Numbered from the stretch's first letter, positions 13,818-56,144 are shown. The stretch is DNA of 64,000 bases from Magallana gigas (GCF_963853765.1 NC_088860.1:32674001-32738000), one strand, 5' to 3'. Program-made: numbers and translations. The notes: a model not told the origin generated them from the sequence alone.

Positions 13818-16258
13818 TTAGCTCTCCTCTTCATTTTGCCTCTTAAGCCAATTTCCGTACTTAGTTTCGTGGTCTTCATTCGAGTCTTTGTCGATTTCTT
13901 TCATGATGACGTCAGCCAGCTTCCAATTTTGGTCTAAATATTTAAAAAAAAAACAGCCTCATAAAACTCTGTATAAATATTTCACAGTATATAATATAGA
14001 ACAAATAAATGAATTTCAAGGCTAGAGACTCACCATCATATTTGATACATCTACATTTATCTTGCATTTCTGCAGGGGTAGCTTTGGACTGTAAAATGGC
14101 GGTAATCTGGTCCACGAGTTGGTCCCGCTGTTCGTACATTCGCTGTTTTGATAGTCCTGCTATCATCGAGACGTTCATCTGAGACAATGCATTAATCGGC
14201 GTCAACATCTCCCCTGCGAAGTAATAGTCGCACGTCTCACCCTACAACAGATATTTTAGTTTTGTAAATTAAGGAGGTTGGCACCCGAAATAATAGTCAT
14301 CATGTCAATCACCCCAAAACCACGTAGACATTAAGACGGTGGGGGGGGGGGGGGGGTTAAAATGTTCATTTATTTTATTTGTGACCAATGTTACATGCCA
14401 TTTTTTTTTTGGAAATATAGGGCCCCAATCAGAAATGATAATTTTCCTGAAATTTTTGCCAAAATTTGACATAGAAATTGATAATTTTAAGAAATAAATT
14501 AAAATTTATAGTTTGAATTATTATTTAGTTATGATTTTAAGTAAAAGTTTAAAAATTCTTGCTTTACTTGTGGCTTCAAAGGCCAGTACATAATGAACAC
14601 AACAACAGATGCTACAAAGTTTTAGAGTAAATAAATTATAACGCAAATAAATTTTTTTATAGTAATGTCATCTTTCCAAAACTTTGCATACAAATAGACA
14701 TACGTTTGATGAATCATTTAAAAGTAAAACAAGAAGGGGTCACATCTCAAAAATTTGAGATATAAAGCATGAAATAAGCTAAATTTAGGCCAAAATTGGA
14801 GTTTTTTCTTAAAGCAATATGAGCTGCATTTTTCATGTTGAATTTTTTTTAACTAAAATGTTCTTTTCTACTAAAATGACAAAAATATCATGGTTTTTAA
14901 ATTTCTGTTAGCCATATTTTTGTGAAAAACGCCGTTAAGAAGCCTTTCTTGGAGCAAAATTGAATTATTGATTTGCAATAAATTCCTTAGAAGATAAATA
15001 TTTCCTTTGACAAAAATTAATGATTTTTTCAAACCTTATTAATCATAAAAGTTTAAGTTACATGCAGACTTATCATACTAGAAGGTTTTTGCAGCAAAAT
15101 AAAATTCTAAAAAATACAGCTCACATTGTTTTAATTTCTATGAAATATAAGGTAAATATGCAAAAATATATCAATAGAAATATCAAAATATTGTTTAAAT
15201 ATGTTTTAGAACATCATGAATATATCGTTATACACAAACTATCTAGAAGTTTGGTCTGCGCTGAAAATTAGGAAGCTCTAGTTATGAAAATTGTTTGTTT
15301 CCTTTTGAAAACATTACGCCACAAAATATAGTCCCTTATTAAAGTCTGTAAAAATGTAATTTTTTTCAAAACAATTTAATTCAATATAGTTTATCTGGCA
15401 TTGTAAAATTTAAATATACTACTAGAATTATTAATATGTGATGCAGAATTTTCAGAATAGAGGTGACCCAAAATGGCTACCCAAAACCTAAGGAGCGAAC
15501 CTCTTTAAGATAATTCGCATTCACCGAGTATTTTCTCCATGATTATGAAAAAAAAGGATGCGATTGATCTGACAGTTACATAGTACCATATATGATATGT
15601 GGTCTCAAAAATATTTATTAAATACCAAAAGTTGTGAATTTTGCTGCGTGTTAATTCACCAGATTAAATGTTCATTCGATTGCAATAGTTTGCATCAATT
15701 TGATAGAAGCGTTGGTCACTAATATAGGTATTCTTGAAACTCGTATGTGATTTTTACTACATACACGAAAATTGATACCCACGAATATCAACAACACCGC
15801 AGACTTAGTACAATTATAAGACTGTGATATTCTGATAACTAAAAAACAATAAAAACTCCTTAAAATTTTTTTTAATCTTCTAAAAGTTTTCACATTTTCT
15901 GTTTTTTATCAATAATGAAAAAAACAATTAGTAAGTTATTTACCTGTATTCTGTAAAGTTTGCACGAAAACACTTTCTTGGTGGCGTTCATTTGTTTCTC
16001 TATAGGTTTAATTTCCAAAGGGGGTTGTATTCTTTCATCTATCTCATGCAGTAACGGTTTAAAATTACAACTTTCGGGGACCAACTCTAGCAAGTGTTTT
16101 GAAACTTTAAATTCTCTACTTGCTGTGAGTTTCCTAATATCATCCTGTGCCATTCTATGTTGCAGGCGTTCGTTAAAATCTTTAAAAAAATTATAAACAT
16201 TAAGATTCCTGTTTCAAGTTATCATTGTACAAATTAAGGTTTTGCACAGTAAAAACAA

Positions 16259-16340
<82 letters not shown>

Positions 16341-19300
16341 CTTTAATTTTATACATACCTGGCAACACATGCCTTAGATAATTGACATGGAATGCCCAAG
16401 CTAATCCGAACGCTACATTACCTACTGGTACCTGGGATTTCAGAGATATTACATCACCTGGGAATCATTAAAAAAGAAAAACCTCTGAATCAATGCAATG
16501 TTGCTTTTCCCCTCCCCTACTATGACAATGTGATACTGTAACAAGATAAACGTCAAAAGGTTGCTTTCTAGATTATTTACGTCTATTATAAACAGTAAAT
16601 AAATTGTTTACACATAAAACTGGTATTTAAAAAATGAAAATTGTCACATATCACACCACATGTTGCTTTCTATATGTAGATTATTTACATCTATTATAAA
16701 CAGTAAATGAATTGTTTACACATAAAACTTGTATTTAAAAAATGAAAATTGTCACATATCACACCCATTCACATATCACACCACATGACATGTTGCATCA
16801 CAATCACATTAATAGTGAAAGCGACATACCCTTAATGATTTCAAATATCCGTTCTTCAAAGGATGGTTCGTTAACGATATCGATATACGTGACCCATTGA
16901 ATGAAGTTTGGAATATATGAGCTATCAACGTCCTTCAGTAAAATGACGATTTTTAAATGATTTTTCTCTATACACTTATTTAGAAGTGCTGCCAGCCAGA
17001 ATTCGATAAACCTTTTCTTCTTAATGGTGTTATTAGATATCAAGCAACAAACCCATCTCGCTTCTTTCACTCTTTCTTCTACCACATCTGAAATATCAAA
17101 TAATCAAAGTACTGAAACGAAATGACGCCTAAATAATACACTGACATGGCGGAAGCGCCATAGTCAAAGGGTGCTTCAAAAACACACTTAATTTTATTAT
17201 TTATAACACCAACATTATTGAAATTTCAAAACGGAATTAACCTGGTGAGTCGATGGGTGGTCGAGCAATTGAACAACGAATGTTTTTGTCTTCCAAGAAA
17301 CCCCGGATGCTATTGATAGTTTTGTTATCCGGGTTCTTACTGTGAGACATACTCTTGCTTTCATGCGCATCAGAGTCGCTGTAAAGAAAGCAGACATCCT
17401 TGGAATAAGCTGGTCTGTTAGGGTCATAAAGGCCAGGGGGCTTCTCACCCTGAAAATAAAAAAAAAAATGATGAGCAAGATCGCCACCAAGCGTAGCATT
17501 CACGCGCGACATAAATGAATAGGAAATGAAATAGCAAAATGATTTATGTGATCATGAATGAAAAACTGACGATTATCTTTCAATATTATTAGTAGTAGTT
17601 TAATGGCGTATACATTACATACATTGCCATAGCATACAATTTAACAGTACTTTACAATAATTGTGGGTACAGGTGGGAGGCAGGTTATATAAAAAGGTAT
17701 AAAGTGGATGAAAAAATATCAAAAAAGACCAACAAAGCAGTAGTTATATATAAACTTAATTTACGCTTATTATCCACAAGCTTTTGTACACTAAACCAAA
17801 CTTACACACAACTAACATGCAACACATGTACAGTGCCTATGTCCATTTTTACCTTTTGATCCAGTGCTCTTTATAACAATAAATCGCTTTATATTATAAT
17901 ACCCCTTTAACCAAATGTTTTAAGGAACAAAAACCATTTTAATCCCAAGCTCTGGTAACAAAAAACTGTTTTATCCCATCATCTATGCAACCTTTTCTTT
18001 TTACATTTACATGTTTATCATGAGGCCAAAATCAACCTATCAAAGTGGATGCTACGAGTGAATCCCCTCCGTATTAAGTTGTCCAAGAGGATGAATATCA
18101 TTTAATTTTAGGGGACCGGTTCTCGTTTTTGTGGATAGACCAGGAAATGATAATTTGTGAGGTTAATGAATTATTAGCAGGTTATGAAAAAATGTGAGTA
18201 AAATTTATTCATAGTGTACGGAAGACCGTTGACGCCACCTAAAAAATATATTATCTTTTTAGCGACCGCCACAAAGATTAGGTGCCGGTCTCAAGATAAA
18301 ATTGGAGTAATTTTTACTTGTAATTTTTATATGCGCGTGGTGTGAACATTTAAACAATAAAATGCTTTCTTTCGTGATTTATTCGGGATATGAAGGTAGC
18401 GACATTGCAGAAAAAATACATAACCCGTGTTAGCGGGTTATGTAAAAAAAATTCTGCAATGATCGCTATCTTCATAACCCGAATGAATCATCAAAGAACG
18501 CATTTTATTGTTTATATTAACATCTTTCTTTTAGCTTATTTATATGTAACTGATTATCAAAGTTAGTAAAATTCACTAAATTACTGTTAATCTATAAAAG
18601 TACGTTAGCTGAAAGAAACAGCAAAATCGTCTCTTGTAAGACTAAATTTCAGTCCAACATCATCATGATTATTTCATGCAGTCCGTGATCTTTATTAGGT
18701 CGCTATAGATTTTGACCAATCGCTAAACGGGGTGTCAAATTGAATTTCAGTCCTGTCACTTTCATGTCAGTTTCAGGCGCTGTAGATTTCGACCAATCGA
18801 TAAATGGGGCGTGTAGATTTTAGTCTGGCTGTTTCTATAGAGCTATAAATTAACTATAAGTTTCCGTAAGAAATAGAGGAAATAATATTTGGTAGATGTA
18901 AATATAATCATATGGACCCCTGCAGAGATTTATGCTATTGTTGCCAAAAACTTTTGGATTAAAAAATGCACAAGGGCTTAACTCGACAGAGGGTTAAAAT
19001 CATTTATCTTTTATATACATCAATAATATTGCAATATAAAAATGTTTGCCAAAATACGAAACATATTGATACTAGAGGTATGTTGCAAAAAAAATGGTTC
19101 ACTCTGTCACAGATCAAAGATATTTTTGGCCGTTGTTAGAACTACATGTATACTCTTGGTCGAAATAAAGAGATAAATTGAAAATGAAGTTCGGAGAGGT
19201 TTTTTTAAAAATCGATTCTGTTGACATAAGTCTATTGGGTGTTTTTTTCTTACTTAGATGACATATAGACTGAAATATTATCTAATTTTGATGGCAGATC

Positions 19301-22300
19301 TGGAAAGGAATCAAGAATTGTAACGATGAAGAAATTATAAGAATGAGAAATAGGAATAAAGTAGATATCTTTTTTCTATTTATAAAAAAAGGTTTTTGGA
19401 CTGTATTTTTTTTATGAGCAACAGTGCAACTTTGAAGTAATATTGCAGTCCTGAACTAACAATAAACCTATGCGCAAGCTGAAAAGAGGCCGAAATGGCG
19501 GCTGCCAAAACCGTATCAGCTGGCCGCCAAATTATTAAGTAGCGGCTGCCAAAATTATTTATTTTTTCACATGACACAACTGGTTTCCGTAAATAAGAAC
19601 TTTTTTGTTAAAATTTCTAATTACTAAGTATGCCGACGACACACTCAGGTATTCTCTCAGAAATATTCACTTGGATATTTAAAAGAATGAACTGAATATT
19701 TTTTGTAATATTATTAATAAAATTGAAAATGATTTTGATTAGAATAAACGAGAAATTAAAATGTTAAATACACTGGAGCTGTATTTACTAGTACCTTATA
19801 CCTCGTTAAAAAAGACAAAAGAGTATGCATCTAAAAAAAAAGCTACAGAAGCTGATAAACAAAGCTAATAAAACGTGCATTTACTTCACTTTTTCCTAAT
19901 ATTTAGATAACTTAGAGTAAATCTTCTAGTTATTAATTTACATGTGTATAATTTTATATCCATACCTGTTTCCTCTGTGAACATGTCAAATGTAAATATT
20001 TCATTGTAATTGTTTTTAAATTTCTGTGGAGATCTAGAATGTCAGAATAGAAGATCAATATACGGACTTTTCAATTATAATGATGATCAATTCATAATGC
20101 TACGTTCCCACTATCACGATTCGCGGCGCAATTGCAACCGCGGTCTTAAAAAGTATATAGTAATCGTATAGTAATCGCATCAAATCTCACAAGATCATTA
20201 GGTATGTCATGGCAATCGTGTTAATCATAGAACATTAATTTGTCTTACTGTCAAAAAATATATACCATCAACATAATTTTATTTCATTCGTAATAATTCG
20301 TTATCATCGTATCAGATCGCATTGCATCGTTACTAAGCGCAGCCCGTCGCATTTAATCGTGGCCCCCTCCTAATCGTATTAATTAATCTGGATCAATGTT
20401 GGAGTGACAAACACCACGCTGCGCTACGTTTAGTTAAGATGTACCACAATGGTCAGTCGGGCTAAATGGATATATTGTGGGGTCGAATTGTATCAAATCG
20501 TAATCATCTTCCATCTTGATCGTAAAAAAAAATCGCCATCATTATCATACGCCATCGCAACAAAGAACATCGGTTCGTGATGCACGTATCGTAACGTATA
20601 CGAACGTATTTGCACAAACACAAGCGTCCCTAATCGGAGACTCGTTTCGTGTTCAAAACAGATCAAGATCATATCGTGAATTCTCTCTAGACAATCTTAT
20701 CCAAACAAATTTTATTGTATCTAAACGAGCAATACGATCGTTACAGATGACGTCACCTGAAATGTGTCTGTCGTGCCCGCATCGTATTCAAGCTCAACAA
20801 ATCGCACAACGACTTATAGACTCGCATCACCTTTTACCTAACCTCCTTTTTAGAATTATAGAGAATTTGTAAGATAGTTACGATCTATTTGTCAATCAAT
20901 GTGTTCGTAACAGATCGCACGACAGTGGGAACTTAGCATAAACTTAAAAGAATCACCTTGTGTTTTAATATCTTTAGCTTCAAAACTCAGAATGTCTAGA
21001 ATTGATTTTTTTCCTTGATTCATGTAAAGCGTTATTAAACAAAAATTACGAGGAAACGTTTTAAACCAATATTCCGGTAAATTAATTTTGTTGTATATGT
21101 ACATTTCAATTCGCGTACGAATGTGAGATCTTACTAAAGGAAACGTGAACAAATCCTTCACAAAACAAGAGGCCAATAGGCCTTAACGGTCACCTGAGTA
21201 GCATATAACCCATACACAAACTTGTCGAGGAGTCTCATATATGCATTTATTTAGGTTTCATTCTGGAGTAGAAAAATTATAAATTTGTAATGACGACCAC
21301 CTCTCTGCCTAAAATCTTTTAAAAGAACTATGTAACCTAATATTTTGGCGAAAAACTTAAAGATCTGGTCTACAAAATCATGAATTCAGTTTTCCTTTCA
21401 GGTGTGTGGGAGTAAAGAAGATAAGAAGACAAGTACATTATACGCATTAACACATATACATCCATTTTGGCCCTGCCTTAGAGTCACATCCCATACTTCA
21501 GGGAACATTAAAATTTCAGTAGAGGACTTCCTGGTTAACATAATTATGAAGTCAGTTTTTCATACAGATGTGTGAAAATAGAGAGGAAGATTTTTAAACA
21601 TTATATGCCTTAACACTATATTGCCATATCCCCCCCCCCCCTCCATGTCCTGAACCCCTGACCCACGGGGCCATGAATTTCACAATTTAGGTAGAGGAGT
21701 TAGTGGACATCATAACCATGTATTCAATTTTTTTGCCCACTTGTGTGGTAGTAAAGAAGAAGATTTTTTAAGATTTAATACATTTTTACTATATGACCAT
21801 ATTGGCCCAAACCTGGAGCCTGAACCCTAACACAGGGGTCATAAATGTCACAATTTTGGTGGAAGACTTAAGGACATTATAACCAGGCATTTAGTTTTTA
21901 ACAAATATATATGGGAGTAGAGAAGAAGATTTTCTAAGATTTATTACAGCTTACCTATATGGCCATATTGGCCCCACCCTAGAGCCTGAACCCCTGACAC
22001 AGGGGTCATGAATTCCACAATTTTGGTAGAGGGCTTCACGGACATCATAATCATGCATTTAGTTTTTAACAAATATATATGGAAGTAGAAGATTTTCTAA
22101 GATTTAATACATGTTTACTATATGGCCATATTCGCCCCACCCTAGAGCCAGAACCCCTGACCCAGGGGCCATGATTTTCACAATTTTGTTAGAGGGCTTC
22201 ATGTCATGGACATCATAACCATGCAACCAGTTTTTTCTTCACATGTATGGGAGTAAAGAAGAAGATTTTTGAAAATTTTGCCTTTTTGGGCATATGTGGC

Positions 22301-25300
22301 CCCACTTGTGGTGCCCCAGGGGTGTTAGAGCCACGAATTTCACTATTTAGATTCCTCTTACCATAGAGATGCCTCACACCAAAAATGGTAACAATTAGCC
22401 TTGTAGTTTTTAAGAAGAAGTTAAAAATGTAAAATTGTTAACGCACAACGGACGACGCACGACGACGGATGAAAACAGATAGCAACCTAAAAATATAATC
22501 TAACGATTTTTTAAGTAATGAGTCAAACAATCAGTATAATGCTGCTTATCTAACTAGATAAATGTGTCCTCTATGAATTGCTTTTAATATCATTCGAGCA
22601 TCTATGATTTAGAACTTTAGATAACTGTTTTCTGTAAAATGAAACATATATGTACCTTAATAATTGTAGTTTCTTTTTTTTTCTTTTTTTTCAGTCTAAA
22701 CTTATTACTTGATGTATCTACATGTAACTTTTTTAATCTCTATAATGAACATGTTTATACGTCGTAATATTAAAAATCTAAAATTTGCAGTTTGTATCAA
22801 ATATCAACAATAGTGAATTGATCATACCACCGGTTTCAGAAAGGTTTCTTCTATAGCGCTCCGGACCCCTTTGAACAAAACTCTAGACGGAGTACTTTCC
22901 TCATCTTTCCCTTCGTCTAAAATGAAGGAACGATGATACAAATGAACAAACTTCCAAACAGTTGTACGAAAAGAATGTCCAAAATCTCGACTACCAGACA
23001 ATGCCTGTTATACTCATCTTGCTTACCGTCGAACACCAAGACTTTTGCTCTTCCGAAGCATTCCTGATTTCTTGTGTGGTTTAATAGTTCTTCTGTCTTG
23101 TATTTGAACCTTTCCACTTCCGTTCTTCGCTGAAGTGGAGTTAGAAGGTTCAGAACTTCGTCTGTTATCAAGCCGAGAGCACACAGGGCGCTTGGGTACT
23201 CAGCGCAGCAGAAATATTCCTAACGGAAAAGTATCAACCTTTTTATAATTATTAATTTATGGTGGGGGAGGGGGGGGGGGTTAAGCACTACCCACATTTC
23301 CTTTCAGAAAAAAATTAGGAACCTTTTCTTTTTTTATGGAGAATTTGTTCGAGTGGTTTGTTTTTTCTCTATTCTTCTCAGAGGTGTTTCTTGTGCTTTT
23401 ATGTTAGTAGGTCTATTATCAAATTAAAAGTAGATATTTTTTGGCATTGTTCATAAAAAAATCAAAAGGCAAATTACACACTGCCAGTTTGAAACCAATC
23501 TGTATGCAATATATTATCACATTAAAATTTTCTGAATCAATTTATCTTTCTTACCTCATCTTTGCCATTTTCGTTCTTCCCGTTGACCTTGTAAATGGTC
23601 GGTGTGTATTTACGGCCATTCATTTCGATCACAACTCTACCCATATTCTGAACGTTCGGGTCTATATCCGCTATGTCTCTTTGCCCCTTTGCGCTCAGCG
23701 GACAAAGCATGAAAAATACTGTGGACATTTTGCCGAGGTTGTTTTGGAATATATCCGATTTTTGTATATATTGAGCTAGAACTACAAAAAATAATAAATA
23801 AATAAAATCATATTTTGAAAGTACATGTAGTTTAAATTTTTAACATACATGTTATTCATCAAGTTATTTAACAAGAACGTAATTTTTATAGGAAATATAA
23901 AAAATACGAAAAAAAATTAAATTATTTTGTGATAGTATATGTACTTTTTATTTTTAACATAGCCTACATGTAATTCGTCAAGTTATTTAACAAGAACGTT
24001 AATTTTATAGAAAATATAAGAACTACGAGAAAAAAAATTAATCATATTGTGATAGTACAGTCATGGAGTTTTTATTCTTAACATCTTTTGTCAAAGTTAT
24101 TTAAAGAACAACATTTTTATGAAAAGCATAAATTGTCTAGTTATTTTTGTTGGTCTTCAAATTGATATAATTATTTAAATCCACCAAGTATTATTCCCTC
24201 TATTTCTTAGGAAAACTAATAGTTAATTCATAGCTCTATAGAAACAGCCAGACTGAAATCTACACGCTCCGTTTATCGATTGGTCGACATCTACGGCAGC
24301 TGAAACTGACAAGAAAGTGACAGGATTGAATTTGACACGCCCTGTTTATCGATTGGTCGAGACCTACAACTACCTAAGAAAGATCACGGACTGCACGAAC
24401 TAACCATGGTGATGTCAGACTAAAAGTCTCACTGGAGACGATTTGGCTGTTTCTTTTAGCTAACGTACTTATGTACAGTAACAGTAATTTAGTGAATTTT
24501 ACTTACTTTTTACGCTCAATTTATTAATTAGTTAAAATAAAGATGTTAATATAAACAATAAAATGCTCACTTTGGTGATTCATGTGGGTTATGAAGGTAG
24601 CGATCATAGCAGAAAAAAATTTACATAACCCACTAACGCGGGTTATGTATTTTTTCTGCAATGTCGCTACCTTCATATCCCAAATGAATCACCAAAGTGA
24701 ACATTTTATTGTTTAATTAAAACAGAAAGACAAGACAGTTAAAGTATATGACAAATGTACCTGGTAGAATATTCTTTAAATATCCAGCGAAGTGTGACCA
24801 TGCCATTCCCACGGCAAAGTTTCCGGCCGGGAGAAGCTGGTTTAAAGATACCTCTCCTGTATAAAGCACAAATAATTCAACAACTTTATTATTATATAAC
24901 TTACACCGAAAACAAACTCACTTTTGATCTCCGTCTTATCTCGCTTTGTAATATCCCTTTTGTAGAAATAAAAAAATAAGTAGAAGAGATGAAAAGTAGT
25001 GCTGGACCTCATGCAAGTATTCATACATTGGACAACAATAAAGAATTCGGGTTCAAAAGCCGTAAAACTTGGACGAGCTCACTTTTGATCTCATTCTCGC
25101 TTTTTTTTTTAATTGGAATATATGATGGTAAAGAATGATTTGAGATAAAAAAAAAAAAAAAAAAAAAAAAAAACCCACCACCATATTATTATTTTATAAA
25201 TTCGTCTAGGTGTTATTATAGTCAGTAACTGATTTTGCTGGAAATAACTCCTTAGATGGATACATAAAAAATGGAAGAATTATCCGGCAAGGTGTGATAA

Positions 25301-25779
25301 CACGTACGTTTCAAGGTCTTGCAAACCGTCTCCATGCAGCGTTCGTGATAATTGTCGACTAGAACCATTTGCGTGGCTTGTTGAAGGAAGGGAATTTCCG
25401 GCAGCTCTTGGACGGACATTCCATCTATCAGGAGAACCATGAGGGAGAGCCTTCCCGTCTGTAGACACTGTTCCAAAGCTAGATAGGTCTCCAGGGAAAA
25501 GTCAATGTTCTTAGCACTCTCTGATAGAATTAGAAGAGTTTTCTTACTGTTCTTTATAGCCTTTGCAATGTTTTTGTACTGATGTGCCGCCATGGGCGTT
25601 GAGATGGCAGGGCGAATGAATTTTAATTTTAATTGTTCAAAATTGGATAAAATGGTTTTCTCGATTCTATATGCATCCTCTGGCTTGAAAAAGATTGTGA
25701 CGTCACTGTCTTCCATATCCTTCTTCCATTGTGAATCCTCATCACTTGACTCATCACCCGGTGTCGGCGCTTCCGCCAT
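13818..25779 (-). CDS. Tandem TIR-STING-TIR-STING protein, ~733 aa, no transmembrane region. Exons (minus strand): 25779-25308, 24856-24761, 23781-23555, 23219-23027, 22916-22828, 17449-17242, 17087-16830, 16457-16359, 16179-15944, 14241-14034, 13933-13818
   Basis: Exon lengths 472+96+227+193+89+208+258+99+236+208+116 = 2202 nt, giving one open frame; every junction is GT-AG and phase-compatible. STING motifs occur twice: NFAVGMAWSHFAGYLKNILP / FFMLCPLS..DPNV / GRKYTPTIYKV / CAEYPSAL..RRTEVERF..TEELL, and GNVAFGLAWAFHVNYLRHVLP / LLELVPESC / KKVFSCKLYRI / AGEMLTPINAL..GLSKQRMYEQ. These parallel human STING [20 protein letters not shown] / LYILLPLDC / RVYSNSIY / LEYATPLQTL..GFSREDRLEQ. Each STING domain follows a TIR-like alternating strand/helix region. 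Minus-strand AATAAA at 13458-13453. Confidence 0.88.
14273..15504. mobile_element. Putative Kolobok-like non-autonomous element with TTAA target duplication, in TIR-STING intron 9
   Basis: TTAA at 14269-14272 and 15505-15508; short imperfect TIRs GGAGGTTGGCACC vs reverse complement AGAGGTTCGCTCC; very AT-rich interior. Confidence 0.5.
16262..16337. repeat. (CT)n microsatellite about 20 nt from the exon-8 donor of TIR-STING
   Basis: Direct dinucleotide run. Confidence 0.9.
16561..16765. repeat. ~100-bp tandem duplication in TIR-STING intron 7
   Basis: AGATTATTTAC.TCTATTATAAACAGTAAAT.AATTGTTTACACATAAAACT.GTATTTAAAAAATGAAAATTGTCACATATCACACC occurs twice. Confidence 0.85.
16830..17449 (-). other. 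TIR-like domain 2 (exons 6-7)
   Basis: YSKDVCFLYSDSD..IRGFLEDKNIRCSI..VKEARWVCCLISNN..KIVILLKDVDSSYIPNFIQWVTYID matches TIR box1, betaC and the P.FL...tyID end. Confidence 0.82.
18350..18856. mobile_element. ~500-bp hairpin-ended interspersed element, copy A (TIR-STING intron 5)
   Basis: ~80-bp imperfect hairpin centred on ACATAACCCG-TGTTAG-CGGGTTATGT (~18418-18443); the whole element is the reverse complement of 24220-24716. Confidence 0.8.
20098..20938. mobile_element. PIF/Harbinger-type (Tourist-like) MITE, 841 bp
   Basis: TIRs TGCTACGTTCCCACTATC / GACAGTGGGAACTTAGCA; TAA at both flanks (20095-20097, 20939-20941), matching the TWA target duplication of PIF/Harbinger. Confidence 0.75.
21164..22490 (+). 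mobile_element. Helentron/Helitron-N-like element carrying about four ~166-bp Cg170-type satellite monomers
   Basis: 5' AACAAGAGGCC..GGTCACCTGAGT; monomers CTGAACCCCTGACCCAGGGG.CATGAATTTCACAATTTTGGTAGAGG... starting near 21650, 21819, 21986 and 22149; GACGACG/GACGG simple tract at ~22441-22470. Confidence 0.8.
23840..24130. repeat. ~120-bp tandem repeat, about 2.5 copies, TIR-STING intron 2
   Basis: TTTTTAACATA..CATGT.ATTC.TCAAGTTATTTAACAAGAACGT...TTGTGATAGTA repeated. Confidence 0.75.
24220..24716. mobile_element. ~500-bp hairpin-ended interspersed element, copy B (TIR-STING intron 2), inverted relative to copy A
   Basis: TAGTTAATTCATAGCTCTATAGAAACAGCCAGACT... is the reverse complement of ...AGTCTGGCTGTTTCTATAGAGCTATAAATTAACTA; hairpin ACATAACCC-ACTAAC-GCGGGTTATGT near 24623-24649. 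A decayed third hairpin lies at ~26415-26520. Confidence 0.8.
25308..25710 (-). other. TIR-like domain 1 (single exon) of the TIR-STING tandem
   Basis: DSDVTIFFKPED..AIKNSKKTLLILSE..FSLETYLAL..LMVLLIDGMSVQELPEIPFL follows the TIR betaA, betaC-alphaC and betaD-DD-loop pattern. Confidence 0.75.
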
Positions 25780-27112
25780 TTTGAATGGAACTGTTCTATA
25801 TAAATGAAAAAAAAATATAAAATTATCATAGATATATATACTAGTATATTATGGGTTTTTTAAAAAGATGATAAGGATTTAACTTTGTTTAATCTTCTTT
25901 TATGGCTAAGTGTAAAACAAAATCTTAAACATAGTAGTTACGTATTTTCTCTTCTATATAAAATCGGACCAAGCAGCTTTAAGAAATCAAATTGTGTTTA
26001 TACAGCTACTGACACAATTCGTTAAACAAATCGTAGACATATTTATCTATCCCAAATGATTCAAACATTATTCGAATACATTTACCAATAATAAATAAAG
26101 TTTACAGTATCAGATGGAGTAACGTCACATTTTAATGCTTTTAGGGTTATTGATTAGACCTGGATTATTTCATGGTGGACCGAAAGTTTGGGTAAATTGA
26201 GAGTAATTACTGAAATTGCTGTAACTTTCCTTACATGGTAGCATTGGCTGTTCCTTCTATACAACGTACTGATGAAAAATATAATGTACGTTTATATGAA
26301 TCATATATCATCTATGAATAATTGAGGAGAGATTTTTAGCGAGAGATACAATTTTATATTTTTTTTTGGTGGTTCATGCGGGACATGTATGCACATTCAC
26401 ATGTAGCAATCTTTGCAGAAAAAAATTATGTAATCTGCTGTTTAAGCGGGTTTTGTATATTTCGGCAGTGTGAGACTTTCATACTTCCATGAACCGCTAA
26501 AGCATTTATTTGTTTAGATATTTCCTACTTGCATTTCTTTTATCTATCAATATCGGTATTCATTTCAATTATACGAAACGCTTAAAAGCTTCGTTCTAGT
26601 TGCTGCCATTAGGCTGGTAATTAGTTAACGAGGGATTGATATCGACTCTATTCACTGCAGAAATGCATTTCACGTGTTAGACCTATACATGCACATAGAT
26701 CCCGATGGTCGGTAGCTTTGAGAAATGATGCTAAATGATTTTATGCTCAAAAGCGTCCATAAAAATAAATATCCATTACTAAAACCCATTTTATAGCGTC
26801 AATAGACATTTTCATTCCTTACTGAGCAGAACAAAACTTGATTGCAATTGAGCCGCGTACGGTTCTAAAAACGGCCAAAAAAATCTTTGAACTGTGTTTA
26901 GAGAGGTCTAAGGGGTTTTTTTCTTCATTGCAAAAGCTTTGCAATGATTGATTGATAGACAAGAAGCTTTTCCGAGCGTAATATCCGGCTGTGCGACTTA
27001 ATGATAAAAAAAATCTTCGACCGCCAAACGTAAATAGCCATGGAATGTCTACTTCTGCTGACAACTGCAACAGAAGTGAAGGACTTTTGGATGTCACCAA
27101 GTCTGAGATAAA

Positions 27113-33852
<6,740 letters not shown>

Positions 33853-54600: not shown

Positions 54601-56144
54601 TAAAGGACGAAAATGAACACCTTGGATTATATATTTTAACTCGTAATAACGAGAAATATTAAAATCATGAGACAATGTAATGATCATCTTTATAATGATG
54701 AGAAGAATAGAGTTGTTGTGACAAAATTTTCTTGTAATTGCAAAACAAATTGTTAAATTGCAAAGGACATTGTCGGTATATTCAACCGTATTTATTTCAA
54801 TTTATTCTGAGTATTTTCGAATTTTTAAAGGAGCCACATTTTTGTTAGAATGATATGAGATACAATTTATTTATTTATTTTGTAGGCAACAATCCTTTTC
54901 TTTTTTGTCATATTGTACAAAGAGCTAAATTAATCGTTAGGAATTTTAAAAAAAAAGAAAGATAAAACGCTTAGCAGCATTATTTTTTGAAAAATGTAAG
55001 TTTTGAGAGAAAAAGTCATGAACTGGCATGAATTGAATTGAAAATACTAGTAAGAATGAATTGAAAATTATTGAAAAAAATAATTGAAAATGTGCACAAG
55101 CAGATAAGTTCTCCTTGAACAAGACACATGAGGACGTCATCAATTTTATCTTCCTTTTAAAACGTGATTTTCTTTCTCATCATCCTATACATGGTTACCA
55201 AGTCTAACGATAGAAAAAATACCTTGAATTGAAATTCGTCAAAGGACTGATCGATGAATCCCGTCGTTTTATATGAGGAACAAACTAGATACTTTAAGAT
55301 ATTGTTAATCCTTTTTTTTTCAAAAAGGATGATTTCGATATATTTCATCAAGACTAACCAAACCTCAAAAGGTGCTAAATAAAAACTTCTTTGCATGTTT
55401 TTTTGTTTGACTTCACTAGTGATGCGTTTTTAAAGTTGCTTAAAGGCATCACAATTTGTTCATTTGATTTGATAGTAAGTGTTAACAGTATCATGTTTAT
55501 ATCACCCAGTTTTCTTGTTAACAAGTTACAATTTTATCACATGTAGTTTAAAATTTGAATTATATATAATATTACCGTAATACAAGCCCAACGCTAAAAT
55601 GTAAATTATACATGATATAAATGAAAAAAATATTGACAGGTGAGACAAGTATTTGTACAAAACAAGTAAAGTACATGGAAATAATTATATATTTTCTTTT
55701 CAAACAGAAAAAGGCACCCGTTTTTCAGTCCCACACTGGATTTACGACAGAGACATCGCCTTCATCAGCAACATGAAATACCAGCACGGAAGACTGGTGG
55801 TGCCCTCTGACGGCTACTATTACGTCTACAGCCAGGTGTCGTTCTTAGAACTGTATTCCGGAAGTAGCGGAGGCACACGGGCCGATTCCGTCTCCCACTT
55901 CCTGTGTCGCTATAATATCATCTACCCCAACGGAGGGGAGGAAACTCTGGCACAGAACACGGTCAGCAAATCCTCGAACAATCAGGTGGTGGGGGAGTAC
56001 AGCAGCCACTTGGGGGCGCTGTTCAAGCTACGGAAAGATGACGAGGTGTACGTGAAAGTTTCGGATTTGTCGCTCATGGTTCGTGACGTCAGGAAGAACT
56101 ACTTTGGGATCTTTAGACTGTCAAATATCACACAGAAAGAGTGA
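38769..56144 (+). CDS. TNF ligand superfamily member (TNFSF10/TRAIL-like fold), type II membrane protein, ~347 aa. Exons: 38769-39242, 46595-46631, 54445-54540, 55708-56144
   Basis: Hydrophobic anchor YLYGLTAVVVTGILILIIVVAVLF after the basic RLRR; Cys-containing stalk (ELCVPC..MCCVE); TNF homology domain TAAHLLGS..HW..AFISNMKYQHGRLVVPSDGYYYVYSQVSF..SSHLGALFKLRKDDEVYVKV..NYFGIFRL. Junctions TTG|GTAAGT, TTTTCAG|..G|GTAAGC, TTTATAG|..G|GTAGAT, AAACAG| are phase-compatible (0,1,1). Extra small phase-1 exons in the 7.8-kb intron 2 cannot be excluded. Confidence 0.9.
39260..39637. repeat. Compound repeat: (CT)n tracts alternating with ~60-70-bp duplicated units, start of TNF intron 1
   Basis: GTTCAGTT.ATA.CATTTTT.ATTAAAATCATAGA.TTTCTGTCGAATTTCT occurs three times (near 39328, 39383, 39514), separated by (CT)n runs. 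Confidence 0.85.
42577..42719. repeat. 72-bp direct tandem duplication in TNF intron 1
   Basis: ACGGAACTCAAATGACGTGTCTAATACATGTT.AGC.ATGAAATCATGTTTA.ACCGGAAGCTTATTTCTA starts at 42577 and again at 42649. Confidence 0.9.
42787..42896. repeat. ~110-bp imperfect inverted repeat (mini-MITE or hairpin)
   Basis: TCTAGATCTAGCTGCAGA...GGGAAATTCGGGTT / AACTCGATTTTCCC...TCTGCAGCTAAGTCTAGA. Confidence 0.6.
52188..52439. mobile_element. ~250-bp MITE with ~32-bp TIRs and TA flanks (Tc1/mariner-type target)
   Basis: TA|GAACCATTTTAACAAGACCTTGGACTTTCGGT ... ACCCAAAGTCCAAGCTCTTGTTAAAATGGTTC|TA. Confidence 0.75.
52572..54434. mobile_element. 1.86-kb non-autonomous TIR transposon with GGG..CCC ends and 4-bp TTAT target duplication (Sola2- or Kolobok-like), in TNF intron 2
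   Basis: TTAT|GGGTTATTATCAAAATATGCAGCCTTTTG ... CAAAAGTCTGCATATTTTGATAATGACCC|TTAT; internal motif GTCAGTGGTGT / ACACCACTGAC repeated in both orientations. Confidence 0.78.

What the first reader, a model, noticed from the sequence alone, without database searches (positions are those of the whole stretch)
13818..25779. A soluble double TIR-STING receptor (TIR1-STING1-TIR2-STING2) in one spliced reading frame
Seen: 11 phase-compatible exons give a ~733-aa protein with two complete STING ligand-binding domains, each preceded by a TIR domain, with no transmembrane segment and no TBK1/IRF3-recruiting tail. Established: STING binds cyclic dinucleotides as a dimer; TIR-STING fusions are known from bacterial CBASS systems and from oysters, so the architecture class is not new. 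Inference: with two non-identical STING domains joined by only ~25 residues (AIEETFLKPV-GEKPPGLYDPNRPAYSK) to TIR2, the protein could fold into an intramolecular STING1:STING2 pseudo-heterodimer, or use STING1:STING1 and STING2:STING2 contacts to cross-link chains into a bivalent filament. Neither mode is available to single-module STING.
Basis: partly seen in the sequence, partly recalled or inferred. Interest (0 to 1): 0.9.

Follow-up and report, generated by a model that had tools for sequence, protein, structure and literature searches.

The report
Oyster double TIR-STING gene, already annotated
This is a real, expressed Pacific oyster gene for a soluble immune sensor made of two TIR-STING units in one chain; it is already annotated and noted in the literature, and how its two sensor halves pair is still untested.

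Summary
They give 733 aa, identical to RefSeq XP_065924351.1 of Magallana (Crassostrea) gigas, earlier LOC105344500.

The critical 22828|17449 junction is real. A 3,069-nt transcript contig carries it. RNA contigs from two further studies and one raw read show it too.

Pfam scores the protein at 151 bits for STING_LBD in two stretches and 40.6 bits for TIR_2. I found no transmembrane segment and no pLxIS tail.

The architecture is not new:
- Proteins of about 715-730 aa with the same layout are annotated in oysters, pearl oyster, mussel, scallop and ark shell.
- A 2024 paper already lists an oyster STING class with two STING and two TIR domains.
- N and C modules split cleanly on a tree at 100/100 support, so the internal duplication is ancient.

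Both pockets keep the ligand-contact residues. Only TIR1 keeps the NADase-type glutamate.

An intramolecular STING1:STING2 pseudo-dimer is the more likely mode. AF2 gives pTM 0.65 despite floppy connectors, and independent AlphaFold DB models share the arrangement. I could not inspect the contact itself, and the complex test gave no verdict.

New details are a 9-nt micro-exon in the linker and four 5'UTR exons.

The parts
33738..33807 (-). 5'UTR exon 1 (outside the finding's coordinates)
   Evidence: Block 1-70 of transcript contig L001, 100% identity
31415..31595 (-). 5'UTR exon 2
   Evidence: L001 block 68-248, 96.7% identity
30909..31005 (-). 5'UTR exon 3
   Evidence: L001 block 246-342
30458..30595 (-). 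5'UTR exon 4
   Evidence: L001 block 342-479
25308..25796 (-). Coding exon 1: 17 nt of UTR, ATG at 25779, then the whole of TIR1 (residues about 25-157; E97 codon at 25491-25489)
   Evidence: TIR_2 weak hit. Aligns to the 6wt6 TIR.
24761..24856 (-). Coding exon 2: start of STING1, helix alpha1 (PAGNFAVGMAWSHFAGYL)
   Evidence: STING_LBD profile positions 1-20, E 1.9e-5. Junctions confirmed.
23555..23781 (-). Coding exon 3: STING1 core and lid
   Evidence: STING_LBD profile positions 23-96
23027..23219 (-). Coding exon 4: STING1 (E272, S275, A276 pocket residues)
   Evidence: The intron 23026-22917 joint is seen in all four runs.
22828..22916 (-). Coding exon 5: last helix of STING1. The donor GTG|GTATGA is followed in frame by a stop at 22824-22822 if left unspliced.
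19966..19974 (-). Optional 9-nt micro-exon AGGAAACAG (Arg-Lys-Gln) in the inter-module linker; gives the 736-aa isoform X1
   Evidence: Flanked by cag|...|gtatgg. KPV-RKQ-GEKPP in P0022 and P0028. Seen as a joint with extra letters in X1 and X13 contigs.
17242..17449 (-). Coding exon 6: rest of the linker (GEKPPGLYDPNRPAYS) and first half of TIR2. There is an in-frame ATG upstream at 17512.
16830..17087 (-). Coding exon 7: second half of TIR2 (W459 at the catalytic-Glu position)
   Evidence: TIR_2 E 1e-4
16359..16457 (-). Coding exon 8: start of STING2, helix alpha1 (PVGNVAFGLAWAFHVNYL)
   Evidence: STING_LBD profile positions 1-20
15944..16179 (-). Coding exon 9: STING2 core and lid
   Evidence: STING_LBD profile positions 24-91
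14034..14241 (-). Coding exon 10: STING2 (E637, T640, P641)
   Evidence: STING_LBD profile positions 98-158
13446..13933 (-). Coding exon 11 (stop TAA at 13820-13818) plus the 3'UTR to at least 13446, where the contig ends. AATAAA or ATTAAA signals lie at 13490, 13477 and 13458.

Best explanation
Shown: this is the annotated Magallana gigas gene LOC105344500. One mRNA encodes a 733-aa protein (736 aa with a 9-nt micro-exon) with no predicted transmembrane segment and the order TIR1-STING1-linker-TIR2-STING2. It arose from a tandem duplication of a TIR-STING unit. The two STING halves share the same four-exon layout and intron phases. The two units are joined by splicing from a donor that sits just before the first unit's in-frame stop. 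The duplication predates the split of oysters, pearl oysters, mussels, scallops and ark shells, and all four domains have stayed conserved since.

Inferred: every characterised STING binds its cyclic dinucleotide in a pocket formed between two ligand-binding domains that dimerise constitutively through helix alpha1. The two non-identical domains of one chain therefore most likely pair with each other. That would make a single-chain pseudo-heterodimer with one asymmetric pocket. A cGLR-made cyclic dinucleotide would close the lid and promote side-by-side oligomerisation of these units, as in bacterial TIR-STING filaments. Oligomerisation would cluster the TIR domains for output. TIR1 keeps the NADase-type glutamate, so it could cleave NAD+ or act as a signalling scaffold. 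TIR2 has Trp or Phe at that position and would act as a non-catalytic partner.
For: Gene and fusion:
- Exon model.
- Identity to the RefSeq protein.
- Full-length intronless transcript contig with the exact 22828|17449 junction.
- The same joint in RNA contigs from two further studies and in one raw read.

Domains:
- Pfam STING_LBD 151 bits in two stretches, and TIR_2 40.6 bits.
- Both ligand-binding domains of the AF2 model superpose on human and anemone STING at TM 0.78-0.88.
- No transmembrane segment and no pLxIS.

Age and constraint:
- N and C modules of 9 proteins form two groups at 100/100 support.
- TIR1, STING1, TIR2 and STING2 are about equally conserved, while the 13-23-aa linker is not.

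Pockets:
- Equivalents of human Y167, R238, E260 and T263 are kept in both domains.
- Fixed module-specific differences exist: S vs A/G at the S162 position, S-A vs T-P at T263-P264, and invariant Gly182 vs invariant Asn540 at the G166 position.

Rigid single-chain arrangement:
- AF2 pTM is 0.65 for 733 aa although the three connectors have pLDDT under 50.
- AlphaFold DB A0A6J8D1Q6 (532 aa) matches residues 166-709 at TM 0.77.
- R7T7C2 (444 aa) matches residues 168-712 at TM 0.67, more than one ligand-binding domain alone could give.

TIRs: E97 is kept in 13 of 14 sequences. The TIR2 equivalent is W or F in all 12 bivalent proteins of about 715-730 aa. The register agrees with the start of helix alphaC in the model.

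Background: filament-driven activation of bacterial TIR-STING, and the solved oyster single-module TIR-STING (PMC9402430).
Against: - No coordinates, PAE or contacts were available, so the STING1:STING2 interface was never seen. A pTM of 0.65 could also come from STING-TIR packing.
- The AF2 alignment had only 14 sequences.
- Complex prediction gave no verdict, because the partner did not fold.
- The model's TIR-STING geometry does not match the 6wt6/6wt7 protomer (TM 0.51, rmsd 9.4).
- No ligand, stoichiometry or NADase data exist for this class.
- A published tree places the oyster TIR-STING TIR with adaptor-type metazoan TIRs such as TICAM1/2 (PMC10732462), which argues for scaffold rather than enzyme output.
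- In this species STING2 has Lys rather than Arg at the R238 position.
Confidence: 0.55

Rival explanations
1. Inter-chain homotypic pairing. STING1 dimerises with STING1 of another chain, and STING2 with STING2 of a third. Each protein is then bivalent and builds chains or networks with two kinds of symmetric pocket.
For: - Homodimerisation is the only mode seen in solved STINGs (PDB list).
- Both pockets keep a full set of contact residues, so each could work as a symmetric site.
- The connectors are flexible.
Against: - STING dimerisation is ligand-independent in the known cases. A bivalent chain would therefore polymerise constitutively, which is hard to reconcile with a switch.
- AF2 and AlphaFold DB models of relatives place the two ligand-binding domains in one reproducible rigid body within a chain.
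- Invariant module-specific residues on the dimerisation helix, such as Gly182 vs Asn540, fit heterotypic packing.
Confidence: 0.2
2. One module is a regulatory or degenerate partner. Only one STING domain senses ligand and only one TIR signals. The other pair acts as an autoinhibitory or decoy element within the chain.
For: - TIR2 lacks the catalytic-type Glu (W459).
- STING2 carries Ala or Gly at the S162 position, and Lys at the R238 position in Crassostrea.
- TIR1 scores poorly against Pfam.
Against: - All four domains are similarly conserved across the bivalve orders sampled.
- Y167, E260 and T263 equivalents persist in both ligand-binding domains.
- A STING pocket needs two halves in any case, so a silent half is not distinguishable from the pseudo-dimer reading with these data.
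Confidence: 0.2
3. There are two separate tandem genes. The first ends at KPVV-stop (22824-22822) and the second starts at ATG 17512. The fused form is then only a minor read-through or annotation artefact.
For: - An in-frame stop directly follows the exon-5 donor, with an ATTAAA about 90 nt further on.
- An in-frame ATG lies upstream of exon 6.
- Same-strand read depth of 2-4x at 17480-18279, against about 6x on exon 6, and some depth just past the exon-5 donor in X22.
Against: - A full-length fused transcript contig exists.
- The 43-member protein cluster lists several 745-761-aa products on Logan contigs of only 2.5-3.1 kb.
- The junction is found in three studies.
- RefSeq fused models exist in about ten species.
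- A search for 198-630-aa relatives of module 1 found no single-module orthologue.
- Short isoforms may still exist as minor products.
Confidence: 0.03

Closest known systems
Single-module oyster TIR-STING (PDB 6WT6 and 6WT7, 'Metazoan TIR-STING fusion', C. gigas; also the 396-aa CgSTING studied by RNAi)
   Same: - Same species.
- Cytosolic, with a TIR placed N-terminal to a metazoan-type STING ligand-binding domain.
- No transmembrane helices and no C-terminal tail.
- Aligns to residues 72-345 at E 1e-21.
- The fold search ranks it first.
   Different: - It is a separate paralogue, about 20-23% identical in the structural alignment.
- It has one TIR and one STING and forms a symmetric homodimer.
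- The window's gene has two diverged modules in one chain.
- Functional work (2'3'-cGAMP complex, RNAi) concerns the single-module form only.
Annotated bivalve double TIR-STING proteins: C. virginica LOC111136300, Saccostrea LOC134243266 and LOC134248495, two Pinctada imbricata proteins, Mytilus trossulus LOC134712311, Mizuhopecten LOC110447478 and Tegillarca KAJ8310874. This is the 'two STING, two TIR' oyster class of PMC11103948.
   Same: - Colinear over the full length and 713-730 aa long.
- 33-73% identical to the window's protein.
- Same four domains.
- The window's protein is a member of this family.
   Different: Nothing structural differs. All are named 'uncharacterized' or 'hypothetical', and none has been studied experimentally as far as the searchable library shows.
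Bacterial CBASS TIR-STING (for example Sphingobacterium faecium SfSTING)
   Same: TIR fused N-terminally to a STING cyclic-dinucleotide receptor. Ligand-induced filament formation activating the TIR is the likely working model.
   Different: - The bacterial STING domain is the minimal prokaryotic type. P0023 gives no PF20300 hit.
- The bacterial protein has a single module and forms a homodimer.
- It is encoded in an operon with a CD-NTase.
- Published trees indicate that the animal fusion arose independently (PMC10732462).
Vertebrate transmembrane STING (TMEM173)
   Same: Same ligand-binding-domain fold (TM 0.84-0.88, rmsd 2.3-2.6 A). The Y167, R238, E260 and T263 equivalents are kept.
   Different: The oyster protein has no four-helix transmembrane domain and no pLxIS motif in its tail. 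TIR domains take the place of both.

Membership tests
STING ligand-binding domain (Pfam PF15009) | Profile match above the curated cut-off of 27 bits | tested here: met
   P0023 scores 151 bits, E 2.9e-44, in 2 stretches, with the best stretch covering 528-711 over profile positions 1-180 of 182. The exons of both copies hit colinear parts of the profile.
STING ligand-binding domain (Pfam PF15009) | STING ligand-binding-domain fold | tested here: met
   The AF2 model matches human, anemone and coral STING at TM-by-target 0.78-0.88 and rmsd 2.3-3.6 A. Sequence hits of solved STINGs cover both 168-334 and 527-716.
STING ligand-binding domain (Pfam PF15009) | Cyclic-dinucleotide contact residues (human Y167, R238, Y240, E260, T263) | tested here: met
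   STING1 has Y183, R246, Y248, E272 and S275. STING2 has Y541, K616 (Arg in most relatives), F618, E637 and T640. These are conserved across 12-14 sequences. The test is by alignment only.
STING ligand-binding domain (Pfam PF15009) | Dimeric pocket and actual ligand binding | not testable with these tools
   Complex prediction gave no verdict. No coordinates were available from the AF2 model.
TIR domain (Pfam PF13676 / PF01582) | Profile match above the cut-off for each of the two TIRs | tested here: inconclusive
   TIR2 scores 40.6 bits against a cut-off of 28. TIR1 alone scores 17.7 bits, below the cut-off. TIR1 does align to the TIR of 6wt6 and has the alternating strand-helix pattern in the model. 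Four relatives score two TIR_2 stretches.
Metazoan TIR-STING fusion (6WT6 type) | Soluble protein with a TIR directly N-terminal to a metazoan STING ligand-binding domain and no transmembrane domain | tested here: met
   The feature is met twice in one chain. The highest Kyte-Doolittle 19-residue mean is 1.45.
Metazoan TIR-STING fusion (6WT6 type) | One module per chain, forming a symmetric homodimer | tested here: not met
   There are two diverged modules per chain. The N and C modules are separated by about 3 substitutions per site on the tree.
NADase-type TIR (SARM1, plant TIR and bacterial TIR enzymes) | Catalytic glutamate at the start of helix alphaC | tested here: inconclusive
   TIR1 has E97, kept in 13 of 14 sequences. 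TIR2 has W459, which is W or F in the family. The register was checked against the model's helices at 96-107 and 458-469. Enzyme activity was not tested. Published trees place the oyster TIR with adaptor TIRs.
Vertebrate-type STING | N-terminal transmembrane helices and a C-terminal tail with a pLxIS motif | tested here: not met
   One search found no hydrophobic segment and no L.IS motif.
Bacterial CBASS TIR-STING | Prokaryotic STING domain (PF20300), encoded beside a CD-NTase | tested here: not met
   P0023 gives no PF20300 hit. This is a spliced eukaryotic gene with 11-12 coding exons.

The most novel reading that the evidence does not exclude
The bivalve double TIR-STING is a single-chain STING pseudo-heterodimer kept since before the split of oysters, pearl oysters, mussels, scallops and ark shells. 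It would have one asymmetric pocket built from two fixed, non-equivalent halves: Ser/Tyr/Ser-Ala in STING1 against Ala/Phe/Thr-Pro in STING2, with Gly182 packing against Asn540 on the dimer helices. Such a pocket could read an asymmetric 2'3'-linked dinucleotide in one orientation. It would be coupled to an asymmetric TIR pair, one with the catalytic-type Glu and one without. A 3-residue micro-exon and a stop-adjacent donor would tune the linker and possibly the long/short isoform ratio.
Probability: 0.4. Interest if true: 0.65.

Novelty: already known. Interest (0 to 1): 0.45.

Why it matters
All structural and mechanistic knowledge of STING rests on symmetric homodimers. A natural single-chain version with two diverged halves would show how an asymmetric pocket reads asymmetric 2'3'-linked signals. 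It would also fix the stoichiometry of a TIR pair in which only one member looks catalytic.

Oysters carry very large cGLR repertoires and several STING genes (PMC9980059). Knowing which receptor class reads which signal matters for understanding antiviral defence in farmed bivalves.

The gene and its architecture are already in public annotation and in one paper. The value here is therefore a confirmed gene model, isoform details and a sharpened, testable hypothesis, not a discovery.

Tried and rejected
- **Complex prediction, STING1 (158-359) against STING2 (513-715).** No verdict. The score was 0.00 and the partner's own fold had pLDDT about 30 without an alignment. This is not evidence either way. 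The first attempt failed because the machine was busy.
- **Coordinates of the AF2 model.** They are not exposed, so the STING1:STING2 contact could not be read. Only pTM and fold-search numbers were usable.
- **The search for homologous proteins with the family alignment and with module 1 alone.** These returned few or no extra relatives and no single-module outgroup. The module tree is therefore unrooted.
- **Morehouse et al. 2020 (PMC7572726).** The paper is not held. What it shows about oyster TIR-STING was taken second-hand from PMC9402430 and PMC8218723.
- **Pfam on single exons.** It gave only sub-threshold hits. This was resolved once the identical database protein P0023 could be scanned whole.
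- **Pfam STING scan of the whole genome.** It found at least eight other STING loci but not the window's own exons at E <= 0.01. This gene is among the more divergent copies.
- **Two-gene hypothesis.** Rejected as the main product.
- **The 'six extra letters' at the alternative joint.** I first took them for an allelic acceptor. I rejected that in favour of a 9-nt micro-exon found at 19974-19966.
Full report
**What is there.** The window is AT-rich eukaryotic DNA. It has eleven coding exons: 25779-25308, 24856-24761, 23781-23555, 23219-23027, 22916-22828, 17449-17242, 17087-16830, 16457-16359, 16179-15944, 14241-14034 and 13933-13818. Every intron is GT..AG, the phases are compatible, and the product is 733 aa. 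tblastn of this protein against the window finds no further copy.

**Is the fusion real?** Two facts made a two-gene reading possible. The exon-5 donor (GTG|GTATGA) is followed in frame by Val-stop at 22824-22822. An in-frame ATG lies at 17512, upstream of exon 6. Four lines of evidence settle the question in favour of the fusion.
- A homology search with TIR1 against 1.8 billion representatives returned mostly proteins of 713-730 aa.
- One cluster member, P0023 (XP_065924351.1/XP_065924352.1, Magallana gigas), is identical to my joined protein. Older annotations call the gene LOC105344500, and C. angulata has LOC128181004.
- A 3,069-nt Logan transcript contig (L001, SRR18452367) aligns to the window in 15 colinear blocks that use all eleven predicted exons and the exact 22828|17449 junction. 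It adds four 5'UTR exons (33807-33738, 31595-31415, 31005-30909, 30595-30458) and a 3'UTR to at least 13446.
- Laying reads on 17080-23060 showed the joint 17448/22827 (CT..AC on +, which is GT..AG on the gene strand) in a stranded poly(A) raw read of X22 and in an X13 contig. The exon 4/5 joint appeared in all four runs.

**A micro-exon in the linker.** A second joint form carries six extra letters. Isoform X1 (736 aa) reads KPV-RKQ-GEKPP. I found AGGAAACAG at 19974-19966, flanked by cag| and |gtatgg. This is an optional 9-nt micro-exon in the inter-module linker, and it explains the second joint form.

**Possible minor isoforms.** In X22 there is some same-strand depth just past the exon-5 donor and at 17480-18279. 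Minor short isoforms are therefore possible but unproven.

**Domains.**
- Whole-protein Pfam gives STING_LBD at 151 bits (E 2.9e-44, two stretches) and TIR_2 at 40.6 bits.
- Exon by exon, both STING copies hit colinear parts of the profile.
- TIR1 is divergent, at 17.7 bits alone. It aligns to the TIR of the solved oyster TIR-STING 6wt6 (E 1e-21 over residues 72-345) and is recognised as a second TIR stretch in four relatives.
- The AF2 model (14-sequence alignment, mean pLDDT 76) has two complete STING ligand-binding domains. They superpose on human, anemone and coral STING at TM 0.78-0.88.
- There is no hydrophobic segment (maximum 19-residue Kyte-Doolittle mean 1.45) and no L.IS motif.

**Distribution and age.**
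- The same colinear architecture is annotated in C. virginica, two Saccostrea species, Pinctada imbricata, Mytilus trossulus, Mizuhopecten yessoensis and Tegillarca granosa. Saccostrea cucullata and Pinctada each carry two paralogues.
- A 1,422-aa Ylistrum model has four STING stretches.
- When nine proteins are split at the linker, all N modules and all C modules form two groups separated by a branch with 100/100 support, about 3 substitutions per site apart. The internal duplication therefore predates the divergence of these bivalve orders. From my own knowledge, that is several hundred million years.
- The STING halves of the two modules share exon layout and phases: exons 2-5 are 96, 227, 193 and 89 nt, and exons 8-11 are 99, 236, 208 and 116 nt. 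This fits a tandem duplication of a TIR-STING gene followed by splicing across the first unit's stop.
- All four domains are about equally conserved, while the 13-23-residue linker is not.

**What is already known.**
- A 2024 paper on abalone immunity states that the nine oyster STING annotations fall into three classes. [quoted passage not shown]
- The solved oyster TIR-STING (6WT6, 6WT7) and the 396-aa CgSTING studied by RNAi are single-module paralogues.
- Reviews and phylogenies discuss oyster TIR-STING only as a single fusion and place its TIR with metazoan adaptor TIRs (PMC10732462).
- Searches for tandem, double or duplicated STING found nothing further.
- The object is therefore known and annotated, but functionally uncharacterised.

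**How it probably works.** By alignment to human STING, both pockets keep the stacking Tyr (Y183, Y541). They also keep the lid Arg/Lys (R246, K616), the Glu (E272, E637) and the Thr/Ser (S275, T640).
- Some differences between the modules are fixed across the family. These are Ser vs Ala/Gly at the S162 position, Tyr vs Phe at Y240, and Ser-Ala vs Thr-Pro at T263-P264.
- On the dimerisation helix, invariant Gly182 stands against invariant Asn540 at the G166 position.
- TIR1 keeps Glu97 at the start of helix alphaC in 13 of 14 sequences. TIR2 has Trp or Phe there.
- Known STINGs dimerise constitutively, and the pocket exists only between two ligand-binding domains. Two such domains in one chain would therefore most simply pair with each other. 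Homotypic pairing between chains would polymerise the protein without ligand.
- AF2 gives pTM 0.65 for 733 residues although all three connectors have pLDDT under 50. By my rough estimate, this requires about three of the four domains to sit in one confident rigid body.
- Independent AlphaFold DB models of relatives share the arrangement. A0A6J8D1Q6 matches residues 166-709 at TM 0.77 by hit. The 444-aa R7T7C2 matches residues 168-712 at TM 0.67, which is more than a single ligand-binding domain could give.
- An 873-aa protein, R7T8P6, matches residues 25-730. From memory that accession series is Capitella teleta; the tool did not show the organism.

**Limits.** I could not see coordinates, PAE or contacts. 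The complex predictor returned no verdict. The model's TIR-STING geometry differs from the 6wt7 protomer (TM 0.51). Whether the TIRs act as an NADase or as adaptors is open.

**Verdict.** This is a real, correctly read gene that belongs to an already annotated and published architecture class. The mechanistic idea is reasonable, sharpened here, and testable. I rate interest as moderate.

Noticed in passing
window 19966-19974 (-): A 9-nt micro-exon, AGGAAACAG (Arg-Lys-Gln), with AG and GT flanks sits inside the 5.4-kb intron between the two modules. It accounts for the 736-aa isoform X1 and for the joint with extra letters in the X1 and X13 RNA contigs.
   Followed up: yes
window 22822-22827 (-) and 22737 (-): The exon-5 donor is followed in frame by Val-stop. 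An ATTAAA lies about 90 nt further on, and then an A-rich run at 22663-22696. X22 shows a little depth just past the donor. A short TIR1-STING1 isoform is possible, but internal priming on the A-run could give the same picture.
   Followed up: partly
window 17480-18279 (-): In raw poly(A) run X22, same-strand RNA depth of 2-4x lies directly upstream of exon 6, against about 6x on the exon. The middle of the intron is silent. An in-frame ATG sits at 17512. The cause could be a retained intron end or an internal start giving a TIR2-STING2-only product.
   Followed up: no
window 21649-22269, and 18280-19080: The intron holds a 163-bp tandem repeat (3.7 copies, 79% matches) and a second repeated element. 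Both reach depths in the thousands to tens of thousands in RNA contigs, on both strands. They are probably abundant dispersed repeats transcribed elsewhere.
   Followed up: partly
window 17693-21165: X1 and X13 contigs join 17693 to 21165 with six other letters between and no splice signals (AA..AA). This could be a haplotype that lacks about 3.5 kb of the intron, or a repeat-mediated assembly joint.
   Followed up: no
window 55653-56144 (+): An open frame of 163 aa matches the TNF family domain (PF00229, E 2.5e-24, 86 bits). It is a TNF-superfamily ligand exon about 22 kb beyond the first 5'UTR exon of the STING gene, on the other strand.
   Followed up: partly
P0011 (Ylistrum balloti XP_060080375.1, 1,422 aa): This scallop model has four STING_LBD stretches and at least three TIR stretches, so it looks like two double units in one predicted protein. 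It may be a real four-module gene or a merge of tandem genes.
   Followed up: no
G000 contigs C8 (11.81-11.85, 43.87 and 48.15 Mb), C2 (19.35 Mb), C9 (47.73 and 47.90 Mb), C3 (10.36 Mb): At least eight other STING_LBD loci lie in the same genome. The C3 match contains stop codons. The window's own exons fall below the genome-wide threshold, so this gene is one of the more divergent copies.
   Followed up: no
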